Below are positions 9,060-11,072 of a DNA stretch of 64,000 nt, piece after piece. Every line of letters starts with the position of its first letter. The first letter of the stretch is position 1. The notes beneath the pieces were generated by a model, which saw only the letters and a list, made by a program, of their open reading frames with translations, made no database searches and was not told where the DNA came from. The translations under genes and the position numbers were made by a program. Source of the stretch: Sminthopsis crassicaudata (taxonomy: Eukaryota); contig NC_133620.1 of assembly GCF_048593235.1 (NCBI RefSeq), positions 291,849,765-291,913,764 of the forward strand, written 5' to 3'.

Positions 9060-11072
9060 TCATCTTTATTGTTCTTGAAGGGAGTAAGAGGTCATCAGCT
9101 CCATTGAGGGCATAGGTCACTGGACAACTCACAGGCCGCTGGAGGGAAAAGAAAGAGCAGAGTGGAACAGAAGATGAGGACATAATGAAATAAAGATGGA
9201 GAAAAGTGAGAAAATTTGAAGGTATATGGCTCCCTCAATAATAAAAATTCTGAGGCCTTCTATGTCCACTGAGATATCTGGAATCTGTTCTAGGAGGCTG
9301 AAATCTACCTTGACTTATGCCCTCTTCTCCCCCCTTCTCCAATGGCCACAGAATTCTCTTGACCAAGATCCTCTCTCTAAATCTCAACTCATTCCTTTTG
9401 AAGAATCCACCCCTCTTTATTGATATCTCACCTAACTCCCTGGGGGGTCTGCAGGAAAGCTTTTGAGTCCAAGCAAAAGGTCAAGAACCGAAACTCACAC
9501 CACGAATTCTTTTGAGGGTTGTGGGGATCTGTAGAGGGAGGGAAGGAAAGAATGATACTAATCCTCTCAACATACATACATACATACTCCCACCCCAGTT
9601 CCCAGATCCCAGACCTCTGGGAATGACATCACAGACCTCTAGAGCACCACTCCCCTCTGGTGATGTCACCATGCTTTTTCCAGGTTTCTGTATGGGAGAG
9701 TAAAGCTTCCATCACCTTTTAGAATTCCCGCCTCTTACTTTGCATAGATGGACACTCACTGTAGAGGAGGAAGCACTGGTAACTTTGTCCTGTCTCTCTC
9801 AGCATGATTCCATCTGGGCAAAAGCTGGAGAAAAGTTCAGTCTTCATATCAAGGCAGCCTGTTGTGGAGTAGTGGGGGTAAAGATTGAAGTGGTAGTGGA
9901 TAGGGGAGGTTATTAGAGGACATAAAGGAAGACCTGGAGAATGGGTAACCAACCTTCGGTCTTGAGATCTGTGCTCCCATCAGTCAGATGGTAAGTCCAT
10001 TCTGGGGGTACACAGTGCCCATTTTTCCTGACAAGTTTGGAATAGGATAAAGGAATGTGACCCTCCCCTTCACACAAAATAGATACACCCTTTCACCAGT
10101 CATCTCCTCTCATTTAATCTAATCCATACAGCAAGGAATCCAATTTTTTTGTATCTGTTAATCAGGATTCTACCCAGGGATGAATTAGAGACTAGAATCA
10201 GCTAACCAAGAGAAGTCAGGATACCAAGTGGCTGACTAATTAGGACCCTTGATGGAGTTTCACTTATCTAGTGGAGAAAGGTAACTACATTTGGCAGCTG
10301 AGAATGGCCCAATTAGAAACCTAACCTTAACAGAGTCTTTGACTTCAGGAATTTCTGGCTTGAAATAATAAATGGAGAGAAAGGTATCTAATGGGATGCC
10401 CTTCCCCACAACTTACATTCTGATGGTGGCCTGTAGGGGAATGTGGCTAGCAGCCATGTTGAAGAGAATGTTGTCCACTGGGACAAAAATCATCAGCTCC
10501 TCCTGGGTAGGAGCTGCACCAGCAATGAAGTATCATTGACCCAGATAAGATAGGGTCCAGAGAATTGGATGAGCAAGACAGGGGAAAGAAGGAATGGAAT
10601 AGAACACAAACCCTCCCTTTGCTGCTGGTTTCAAGTTTTGGTGTGATCCTTTCTCCAACCTGATTCTCCAGTAGTTTTGGAACTAGGGATTATCAAATTA
10701 TCAAAATTAAGCAAATTTCATTTGCCCTTGTTCACTCTTATCCCTCTTAATAAGGCTTTTTCATTTGTCAAATCCTTTGGGGGTAACTCTAATGGTCTCA
10801 GTACTCTTTTTTTACCTTCTCTCCTGATCACTAGCTCCCAAATTTTGTACTTAGATGGCCCTCAGGTTCCCCACCTTCCCTTAAAATCTACAGACTACCA
10901 AAACCCTGCTTAATTAACTTCTATTGTCTCTCCTCTACCCTCCTCCATTTCCTCATACCTCTTTTCCATTTACTTTCAGAGGATTTAATTTATCAGGCTC
11001 AGAACACTAGTAAATGGACTCATAGAGAATCCCACAGAGATAAAGGAAAGCTGCCCAAATTTGGTGAAACAT
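9060..11072 (-). pseudogene. APOM: Apolipoprotein M unitary pseudogene (six recognisable exons)
   Basis: Exons 11072-10959 (MFHQIWAAFLYLCGILYESIY*CSE...GKE), 10564-10417, 10027-9954 ([24 protein letters not shown]), 9858-9760 ([30 protein letters not shown]), 9528-9432 (..CLDSKAFL..), and a last exon from 9138 (ACELS). AATAAA at 9065-9070. Lesions: TAG at codon 22 (11007-11009), exon-2 acceptor AA, 5-nt duplication, TGA for Trp (10533-10535), 12-nt deletion, and exon 5 of 97 nt versus 99. Confidence 0.93.

What the first reader, a model, noticed from the sequence alone, without database searches (positions are those of the whole stretch)
9060..11072. APOM, the HDL sphingosine-1-phosphate carrier gene, is inactivated: candidate lineage-specific gene loss
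Seen: all six exons are present at the syntenic position but carry independent lesions. Exon 1 has TAG at codon 22 (human Gln). The exon-2 acceptor is AA instead of AG (10565-10566). A TATCT tandem duplication (10543-10552) shifts the frame. TGA replaces the Trp of the lipocalin G-x-W motif (10533-10535). Four codons (LHLR) are deleted. Exon 5 is 97 nt rather than 99, with internal indels and apparent loss of a Cys. By contrast, ~10 kb of neighbouring BAG6, PRRC2A and C6orf47 coding sequence has no disruption, so sequencing error is an unlikely explanation. Established: ApoM is the lipocalin that carries S1P on HDL, and albumin is the alternative plasma carrier. Inference: this species has no functional APOM here and would be a natural knockout for S1P transport. 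I cannot tell whether this loss is already reported.
Basis: partly seen in the sequence, partly recalled or inferred. Interest (0 to 1): 0.85.

Follow-up and report, generated by a model that had tools for sequence, protein, structure and literature searches.

The report
Dead APOM gene in dasyurid marsupials
The gene for apolipoprotein M, the HDL protein that carries the signalling lipid sphingosine-1-phosphate in blood, is a transcribed but broken relic in this dunnart-like marsupial, in Antechinus and in the Tasmanian devil, so dasyurids are natural ApoM knockouts.

Summary
APOM lies on the minus strand (about 9060-11072), between C6orf47 and BAG6. Against an intact marsupial orthologue it has TAG at codon 22, an AA exon-2 acceptor, a 5-nt TATCT duplication, TGA at Trp47, a 12-nt deletion, a 97-nt exon 5 and a deleted stop codon.

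Contigs from four other sequencing runs carry every lesion, with only three intronic SNPs and no indels, so sequencing error is excluded.

The loss is not species-specific. Antechinus flavipes and the Tasmanian devil (two assemblies) have their own disabling lesions at the same locus. All three dasyurids share a 4-nt deletion and an insertion in exon 5.

Nine non-dasyurid marsupials from four orders have a full-length gene (187-192 aa). dN/dS among the dasyurids is 0.75-0.90, against 0.25-0.30 to Dromiciops.

The best reading is a unitary pseudogene, inactivated before the Dasyurinae-Sminthopsinae split (about 21-29 Myr ago). It is still transcribed: exons 3-6 are spliced, and an upstream exon joins exon 3, skipping exon 2.

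Two things remain untested: a whole-genome search for a second copy, and plasma biochemistry.

I found no paper reporting this loss. It is a new member of a known kind (lineage-specific gene loss). An earlier scan note reported a dasyurid-wide NOTCH4 loss in the same genome.

The parts
10959..11072 (-). APOM exon 1 (114 nt, signal-anchor). TAG nonsense at codon 22 (11007-11009).
   Evidence: Translation. Alignment shows CAG in devil, Antechinus and Dromiciops. tblastn with Dromiciops ApoM residues 1-38.
10565..10566 (-). Exon-2 splice acceptor mutated from AG to AA.
   Evidence: Alignment. No exon1-exon2 or upstream-exon2 junction is seen in RNA contigs; an upstream exon joins exon 3 instead.
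10417..10564 (-). APOM exon 2 (148 nt against 155). It carries a 5-nt TATCT duplication (10543-10552), TGA at Trp47 of G-x-W (10533-10535) and a 12-nt deletion at about 10435/10436.
   Evidence: PDB ApoM match E 2e-11. Pfam PF11032 positions 48-86.
9954..10027 (-). APOM exon 3 (74 nt). The frame is intact. It carries R98P (codon at 10003-10005), an S1P phosphate-binding residue.
   Evidence: The junction to exon 4 is seen in RNA. Role of Arg98: PMC4967915.
9760..9858 (-). APOM exon 4 (99 nt). The frame is intact. It carries R116C (9854-9856), P117L and R143C (9773-9775).
   Evidence: Junctions 9954/9858 and 9760/9528 are seen in RNA.
9432..9528 (-). APOM exon 5 (97 nt against 99). A 4-nt deletion at its 5' end and a TCGTG-type insertion are shared with devil and Antechinus. 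A further 4-nt deletion and a 1-nt insertion in the C run (9442-9447) are specific to this genome.
   Evidence: Both borders are confirmed by RNA junctions.
9060..9138 (-). APOM exon 6 and 3' end. A 4-nt deletion at about 9115 removes the ancestral stop. In the spliced frame a TGA at 9129-9131 ends the reading frame early and Cys183 is lost. AATAAA lies at 9065-9070.
   Evidence: Junction 9432/9138 is seen in RNA.
12290..12330 (-). 3' end of an upstream non-canonical exon that is spliced to exon 3 and skips exons 1-2. Its donor GT is at 12288-12289. Its 5' border was not determined.
   Evidence: A loose end of an RNA contig at exon 3's acceptor maps uniquely to 12291-12318. The ApoM frame has TAA just before the junction.
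7443..8303 (+). C6orf47, the intact single-exon neighbour used as the synteny anchor.
   Evidence: 286 aa, PF15576, 93% identical to the Sarcophilus protein. The exact protein is on record for assembly GCA_048593235.1.

Best explanation
This is the single syntenic APOM orthologue, decayed into a transcribed unitary pseudogene.

No ApoM can be made from it. Translation from the normal start stops at codon 22. Exon 2 has lost its acceptor and carries a frameshift, a stop at the lipocalin G-x-W tryptophan and a 4-codon deletion. Exon 5 is frameshifted, the C-terminal Cys183 is lost, and three arginines that hold the S1P headgroup are replaced.

The gene is dead in all three sampled dasyurids: this genome (Sminthopsinae-like position), Antechinus and the Tasmanian devil. 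It was most likely inactivated once, on the dasyurid stem. That places the loss after the split from bandicoots and bilbies (about 48-64 Myr ago) and before the Dasyurinae-Sminthopsinae split (about 21-29 Myr ago). Each lineage then added its own lesions under neutral drift.

Inferred, not shown: dasyurids circulate S1P without ApoM, presumably on albumin or another carrier.
For: Identity and position:
- The pieces match PDB ApoM and Pfam PF11032.
- The gene sits between C6orf47 and BAG6, as in all marsupials examined.
- It is the only ApoM-like sequence in the window.

The lesions are real:
- Contigs of four other runs from four studies cover them with no indels and only three intronic SNPs.

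Family-wide:
- Devil, identical in two assemblies: +1 and -3 in exon 2, a deleted exon-4 acceptor, and TGA at Cys183.
- Antechinus: W47G, -2 in exon 3, -2 in exon 4, and the exon-4 donor GT changed to AT.

Shared by all three:
- A 4-nt deletion at the start of exon 5, plus an insertion about 30 nt downstream. In devil and Antechinus this leaves +1 and an in-frame TGA.
- Replacements at positions invariant from platypus to primates: R85Q in all three, and P117L in dunnart and Antechinus, where the devil has a deletion.

Relaxed constraint:
- dN/dS within dasyurids is 0.75-0.90. This is compatible with 1 and rejects 0.27 at P about 0.01. Against Dromiciops it is 0.25-0.30.

Intact elsewhere:
- Full-length ApoM (187-192 aa) is present in Dromiciops, bilby, two opossums, brushtail possum, koala, wombat, sugar glider and tammar.
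- From dasyurids only patchwork models of 127-169 aa are on record.

Dates are from PMC5715987.
Against: - No stop codon or splice-site mutation is shared by all three species. The case for a single ancestral event rests on the exon-5 indels. The second of these differs in length: +1 here, +5 in devil and Antechinus. If +1 were ancestral, the two shared indels would sum to -3 and keep the frame.
- Exon divergence among dasyurids is still somewhat lower than intron divergence (ratio 0.57-0.83).
- The substitution counts are small (22-27 per pair).
- No whole-genome search for a second copy was possible.
- No thylacine, numbat, quoll or planigale sequence was available.
- The locus is transcribed and exons 3-6 are correctly spliced, so a residual RNA-level role is not excluded.
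Confidence: 0.85

Rival explanations
1. APOM was still functional in the last common ancestor of living dasyurids. In that ancestor the 4-nt deletion in exon 5 was compensated by a +1 insertion, rewriting about nine loop residues. The gene was then lost independently in the dunnart lineage and in the Dasyurinae stem.
For: In this genome the two shared exon-5 indels sum to -3, and Cys157 and the following helix are read in frame. No nonsense or splice lesion is common to all three species. Devil and Antechinus share an extra 4 nt that could be a GTGA tandem duplication.
Against: The devil sequence aligns to the ancestral 14-mer with only two transitions. A +5 insertion in the ancestor followed by -4 in the dunnart therefore needs one indel fewer than the rival. 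dN/dS is near 1 on all three pairwise paths back to the crown node. The stem already carries R85Q and P117L, at positions invariant across mammals.
Confidence: 0.15
2. The lesions are assembly or sequencing errors, or a rare null haplotype of the sequenced animal.
For: Only a general prior about single assemblies. Logan contigs drop rare variants, so an intact minor allele could in principle be hidden (tool caveat).
Against: Contigs from four further runs in four studies reproduce every lesion with no indels. X9 and X10 differ from the assembly at SNPs, so they are other haplotypes or other animals. At least seven independent lesions occur in one gene, while C6orf47 and BAG6 are clean. Two other genera have their own lesions in the same gene.
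Confidence: 0.02
3. A functional APOM copy (duplicate or retrocopy) exists elsewhere in the genome, so the animal is not an ApoM knockout.
For: The whole genome could not be searched with these tools.
Against: A search of 5.8 billion proteins covers the annotated proteomes of this assembly, two devil assemblies, Ensembl devil and RefSeq Antechinus. It returned only fragmentary models from this same locus. APOM is single-copy at this position in every marsupial examined. A published genome-wide lipocalin census that used the devil lists no devil APOM (supplement tree and table of PMC8420045).
Confidence: 0.04
4. The remnant keeps a function, either as a short protein from exons 3-6 or as a regulatory or non-coding RNA. 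That would explain why transcription and the splice sites of exons 3-6 persist.
For: One RNA run shows exact junctions for exons 3-4, 4-5 and 5-6, plus an upstream exon joined to exon 3. Depth over exons 4-5 is higher than over C6orf47. The ApoM frame is open from exon 3 to a TGA in exon 6.
Against: TAA precedes the junction in the ApoM frame, and the first Met leaves about 64 residues with no signal peptide and no strands A-D. R98, R116 and R143 are replaced. Substitutions in exons 3-6 show no constraint, with pN/pS 0.5-2.1. Devil and Antechinus break exons 3-5 in different ways.
Confidence: 0.06

Closest known systems
Functional mammalian APOM (human and mouse ApoM, PDB 2WEW/2YG2/2XKL; Pfam PF11032)
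   Same: Orthologous position between C6orf47 and BAG6. Six-exon layout. Exon pieces are 70-85% identical to marsupial ApoM and match PF11032 and the PDB chains.
   Different: No open reading frame. Stop at codon 22, stop at Trp47, a dead exon-2 acceptor, frameshifts, loss of Cys183, and R98P, R116C and R143C in the S1P headgroup site.
Intact marsupial APOM (for example Dromiciops gliroides XP_043855780.1 and Macrotis lagotis XP_074092825.1, both 188 aa)
   Same: Same locus, same exon borders. About 76% DNA identity across the whole gene to Dromiciops.
   Different: Those genes have exons of 114/155/74/99/99/26 nt and are more than 90% identical to one another in protein. The dasyurid copies carry disabling lesions and evolve at dN/dS of about 0.8.
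Other lineage-specific unitary pseudogenes of mammals, including the dasyurid NOTCH4 relic reported by this scan (note s1-153216)
   Same: A single-copy gene decays in place, lesions are partly shared among dasyurids, and orthologues are intact in other marsupial orders.
   Different: A different gene and pathway. I did not re-test the NOTCH4 claim.
Apparent absence of APOM from crocodile and birds (PMC8420045; chicken class III genes not found in PMC1654159)
   Same: A vertebrate lineage living without ApoM.
   Different: There the gene is simply not found. Here the relic is present with datable lesions, and the lineage is mammalian.

Membership tests
ApoM (PF11032), functional member | Sequence similarity to the ApoM domain | tested here: met
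   Exon 2, 3 and 4 pieces hit PF11032 above its cut-off (34, 28 and 40 bits against 22) and PDB ApoM chains.
ApoM (PF11032), functional member | Orthologous position between C6orf47 and BAG6 | tested here: met
   Same order and orientation as in Dromiciops, bilby, tammar, opossum, sugar glider and wombat.
ApoM (PF11032), functional member | Uninterrupted reading frame of about 188 codons over six exons with canonical splice sites | tested here: not met
   TAG at codon 22, AA acceptor, +5, TGA at codon 47, -12, a 97-nt exon 5, and a deleted stop.
ApoM (PF11032), functional member | Lipocalin G-x-W motif and three disulfides (Cys23-167, 95-183, 128-157; the pairing is from memory) | tested here: not met
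   Trp47 is a stop. Cys183 is lost in the spliced frame.
ApoM (PF11032), functional member | S1P headgroup contacts Arg98, Trp100, Arg116 and Glu136 (PMC4967915) | tested here: not met
   R98P and R116C, plus R143C. W100 and E136 are kept. All four are invariant in the ten intact mammals aligned.
Unitary pseudogene (lineage-specific gene loss) | Disabling mutations that are real, not sequencing artefacts | tested here: met
   Four further runs reproduce them. The devil lesions are identical in two assemblies.
Unitary pseudogene (lineage-specific gene loss) | Functional orthologue in related lineages | tested here: met
   Full-length ApoM (187-192 aa) in nine non-dasyurid marsupials of four orders.
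Unitary pseudogene (lineage-specific gene loss) | Neutral evolution after loss | tested here: met
   dN/dS 0.75-0.90 among dasyurids. This rejects 0.27 (P about 0.01) and does not reject 1. The counts are small.
Unitary pseudogene (lineage-specific gene loss) | No functional copy elsewhere in the genome | tested here: inconclusive
   None is found among the annotated dasyurid proteins or in the window. Whole genomes could not be searched.

The most novel reading that the evidence does not exclude
The loss of ApoM is one of several coordinated losses in the dasyurid MHC class III region. Other readers of this scan reported NOTCH4 and possibly AIF1. Together these would reflect a lineage-wide rewiring of vascular, immune and S1P signalling. 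In that rewiring another plasma carrier would have taken over S1P delivery to endothelium, and the still-spliced exon 3-6 transcript would have been kept for an RNA-level role.
Probability: 0.1. Interest if true: 0.75.

Novelty: new member of a known kind. Interest (0 to 1): 0.5.

Why it matters
ApoM is the main HDL carrier of sphingosine-1-phosphate and shapes endothelial barrier function and lymphocyte trafficking.

A whole mammalian family that has lived without it for more than 20 million years is a natural experiment on how dispensable the ApoM route is, and on what replaces it. The family includes the Tasmanian devil and the fat-tailed dunnart, which is now a laboratory model.

There is also a practical point. 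Automated annotations currently give these species misleading 'apolipoprotein M' models of 127-169 aa. Comparative HDL or S1P studies in dasyurids should not assume that ApoM is present.

Tried and rejected
- DNA for more outgroups (tammar, bilby, Gracilinanus, sugar glider, wombat, Monodelphis) could not be fetched: 'file too large'. Codon analyses therefore use Dromiciops only, and DNA changes on the dasyurid stem could not be polarised. Outgroup proteins were used for that instead.

- The first MAFFT alignment suggested that the exon-5 acceptor had moved 4 nt. Re-inspection showed the acceptor is homologous and that the first 4 exon bases are deleted. I dropped the 'relocated acceptor' reading.

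- One splicing script used an exon-2 end 1 nt too long (10416 instead of 10417). Only the stops at codons 22, 62 and 63 from that output are valid. The later ones are not used.

- The 146-aa 'ApoM' model in this assembly's own annotation (window 9129-14872) was considered as a possible real isoform. Its first codons at 14872 show no ApoM relation, and the analogous devil model is a frame-mixing patchwork. I rejected it as evidence of function.

- Literature searches found no report of this loss. The terms combined APOM or apolipoprotein M with marsupial, Sarcophilus, devil, dunnart, dasyurid, gene loss and pseudogene. A thylacine gene-loss preprint does not mention APOM. PMC6854765 was a false match.

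Full report
**What is at the coordinates.** The minus strand of 9060-11072 holds a six-exon gene whose pieces are ApoM.
- The exon-2 piece matches human and mouse ApoM crystal chains (2wew E 2.2e-11, 2xkl E 2.5e-9).
- Exons 2, 3 and 4 each pass the Pfam PF11032 cut-off on their own.
- tblastn with an intact marsupial ApoM finds five of the six exons here (exon 6 is too short to score) and nothing else in the 64-kb window.
- The gene lies between an intact C6orf47 (7443-8303, plus strand, 286 aa) and BAG6. This is the arrangement in every marsupial examined.
- The window is identical to assembly GCA_048593235.1.
- Its C6orf47 is 93% identical to the devil protein, the representative of a 90%-identity cluster that also holds the Antechinus protein. 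Intron divergences place it outside Antechinus plus devil. That fits the fat-tailed dunnart named in an earlier scan note. I did not verify the species name independently.

**The observation.** I took the intact APOM of Dromiciops gliroides as reference. It has exons of 114/155/74/99/99/26 nt, all with GT-AG borders, and encodes 188 aa. I aligned the loci.
- TAG at codon 22 (11007-11009).
- Exon-2 acceptor AA at 10565-10566.
- A TATCT duplication at 10543-10552 (+5 nt).
- TGA at 10533-10535 in place of Trp47 of G-x-W.
- A 12-nt deletion near 10435.
- Exon 5 of 97 nt (9432-9528).

- A 1-nt insertion in the C run 9442-9447.
- A 4-nt deletion that removes the ancestral stop codon in exon 6.
- Replacements R98P, R116C and R143C.

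Arg98 and Arg116 make direct hydrogen bonds to the S1P headgroup, and Arg143 makes a water-mediated one (PMC4967915). All three are invariant in the ten intact mammals I aligned.

One correction: in the frame that is actually spliced, the Cys157 codon is still read. The Cys that is lost is Cys183.

**Are the lesions real?** I laid contigs of four other runs on 7300-11300.
- One DNA run gives a single contig over 8603-11300 at depth about 65. It has three intronic SNPs (9183, 9300, 9877) and no indel.
- Three RNA-labelled runs from three other studies cover the gene with zero or one difference.
- One SNP (9300) is shared by two runs. At least some runs therefore come from other haplotypes or animals than the assembly.

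Sequencing error and a private null allele are effectively excluded.

**The loss is not species-specific.** I used C6orf47 as an anchor to fetch the locus from the Tasmanian devil (two assemblies, identical over APOM) and from Antechinus flavipes. Both are broken, mostly in ways of their own.
- Devil: -3 and +1 in exon 2; a 10-nt deletion that removes the exon-4 acceptor and 9 coding bases; TGA at Cys183.
- Antechinus: W47G; -2 in exon 3, destroying Cys95; -2 in exon 4; exon-4 donor GT changed to AT.

A 187-192-aa ApoM is annotated in nine non-dasyurid marsupials: Dromiciops, bilby, Gracilinanus, Monodelphis, brushtail possum, koala, wombat, sugar glider and tammar. Where the flanking genes were retrieved it lies beside C6orf47. 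Deakin et al. 2006 reported intact wallaby and opossum APOM of 188 aa (PMC1654159).

A search of 5.8 billion proteins returned only patchwork 127- and 169-aa models for the devil and nothing full-length for any dasyurid.

**When was it lost?** All three dasyurids share a 4-nt deletion of the first bases of exon 5, and an insertion about 30 nt further on.
- In devil and Antechinus the insertion is 5 nt. The net shift of +1 runs into TGA within exon 5.
- In this genome a further 4 nt are missing, leaving +1 at that site.
- The devil sequence aligns to the ancestral 14-mer with only two transitions. The cheapest history is therefore +5 in the common ancestor and -4 later in the dunnart lineage. 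That means a frameshifted, truncated protein already in the ancestor.
- The alternative is +1 in the ancestor (net -3, in frame), followed by a 4-nt duplication in Dasyurinae. It needs one indel more. I keep it as a rival at about 15%.

Other evidence supports early loss:
- R85Q occurs in all three dasyurids. P117L occurs in dunnart and Antechinus, and the devil has a deletion there. Both positions are invariant from platypus to primates.
- The stem carries nine dasyurid-specific residue changes. That is as many as the whole bilby terminal branch.
- Nei-Gojobori dN/dS among the three dasyurids is 0.75-0.90. It is compatible with 1 and rejects 0.27 at P about 0.01. Each dasyurid against Dromiciops gives 0.25-0.30. 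The counts are small (22-27 substitutions per pair).

Using the dates of Kealy and Beck (PMC5715987), the loss falls between the Peramelemorphia-Dasyuromorphia split (about 48-64 Myr ago) and crown Dasyuridae (about 21-29 Myr ago). Whether the thylacine and the numbat share it is untested.

**The relic is still transcribed.** One RNA run shows exact GT-AG junctions for exon 3 to 4 (9954/9858), exon 4 to 5 (9760/9528) and exon 5 to 6 (9432/9138). It also shows a minor junction from a cryptic donor at 9637.
- The exon 1-2 region appears only as an unspliced contig.
- A contig end at exon 3's acceptor continues into sequence that maps uniquely to 12291-12318, followed by a GT donor. So an upstream exon is spliced directly to exon 3.
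- In other marsupials, alternative first exons join exon 2 (isoforms beginning MLIQE-FPGPYLGQW or MTPFARV-FPGPYLGQW).
- Skipping of exon 2 here is what a dead AA acceptor predicts. This link is inference.
- The resulting RNA has TAA in the ApoM frame just before the junction, and no signal peptide. It is best seen as a non-coding remnant.
- Contigs show presence, not absence, and the tissue of the run is unknown.

**Mechanism and consequence.**
- Shown: no ApoM can be encoded at this locus in three dasyurid genera.
- Inferred from established knowledge: ApoM carries most HDL-bound S1P, and albumin carries most of the rest. Dasyurid plasma S1P must therefore travel without ApoM.
- From my own recollection, not checked here: ApoM-null mice are viable.
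- APOM is not found in crocodile or birds in a lipocalin census (PMC8420045). So the loss is tolerable rather than astonishing.

**Novelty.** I found no paper reporting this loss.
- The lipocalin census that used the devil as its marsupial lists no devil APOM in its table or tree, but does not comment on it.
- This is a new, well-supported member of a familiar class, lineage-specific unitary pseudogenes. It has added interest because it removes a much-studied lipid chaperone from a whole family that includes a laboratory model.
I tested neither.

**Limits.**
- No whole-genome search for a second copy was possible.
- Only one outgroup was available at the DNA level.
- Only three dasyurid genera were sampled.
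- RNA evidence comes from assembled contigs of unknown tissue.
- PRRC2A was not checked.

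Noticed in passing
window 12290-12330 (minus strand): An unannotated upstream exon, 1.2 kb above the APOM start codon, is spliced to APOM exon 3 in one RNA run. Its 5' end and promoter are unknown.
   Followed up: partly
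window 9529-9759 (intron 4), junction 9528/9637: The same RNA run shows a second junction into exon 5 from a cryptic donor at 9637 inside intron 4. A (TGTA)n-like run just upstream of exon 5 is longer here than in devil or Dromiciops.
   Followed up: no
window 9129-14872 (minus strand): The assembly's own annotation calls a 146-aa 'ApoM' product over this span. It ends at the TGA reached by the shifted exon 5-6 frame. The analogous devil model (127 aa) mixes frames and upstream sequence. These models are likely to mislead orthology tables.
   Followed up: partly
Proteins P0237 (koala) and P0185 (wombat), residues 23 and 167: Koala and wombat ApoM have Ser at both Cys23 and Cys167, while all other intact mammals aligned keep both. 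The two positions are, from memory, disulfide partners. This would be a coordinated loss of one disulfide in a gene that otherwise looks functional.
   Followed up: no
window 9183, 9300, 9877: Three intronic single-base differences occur in other runs: T>A, G>A and G>A. The one at 9300 is seen in two runs from different studies, so it is a segregating polymorphism.
   Followed up: no
window 46410-47200, and about 646 kb before the window: Other notes of this scan flag AIF1 (this window) and NOTCH4 (same chromosome) as dead genes. With APOM, that would make three losses in the dasyurid MHC class III region. I tested neither.
   Followed up: no
L004 11660-13657 and L002 11702-13687: RefSeq-derived gene calls at the APOM locus of Antechinus (192 aa) and devil (213 aa) have no ApoM Pfam hit on record, and they did not appear among ApoM homologues. 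What these models encode was not worked out.
   Followed up: no
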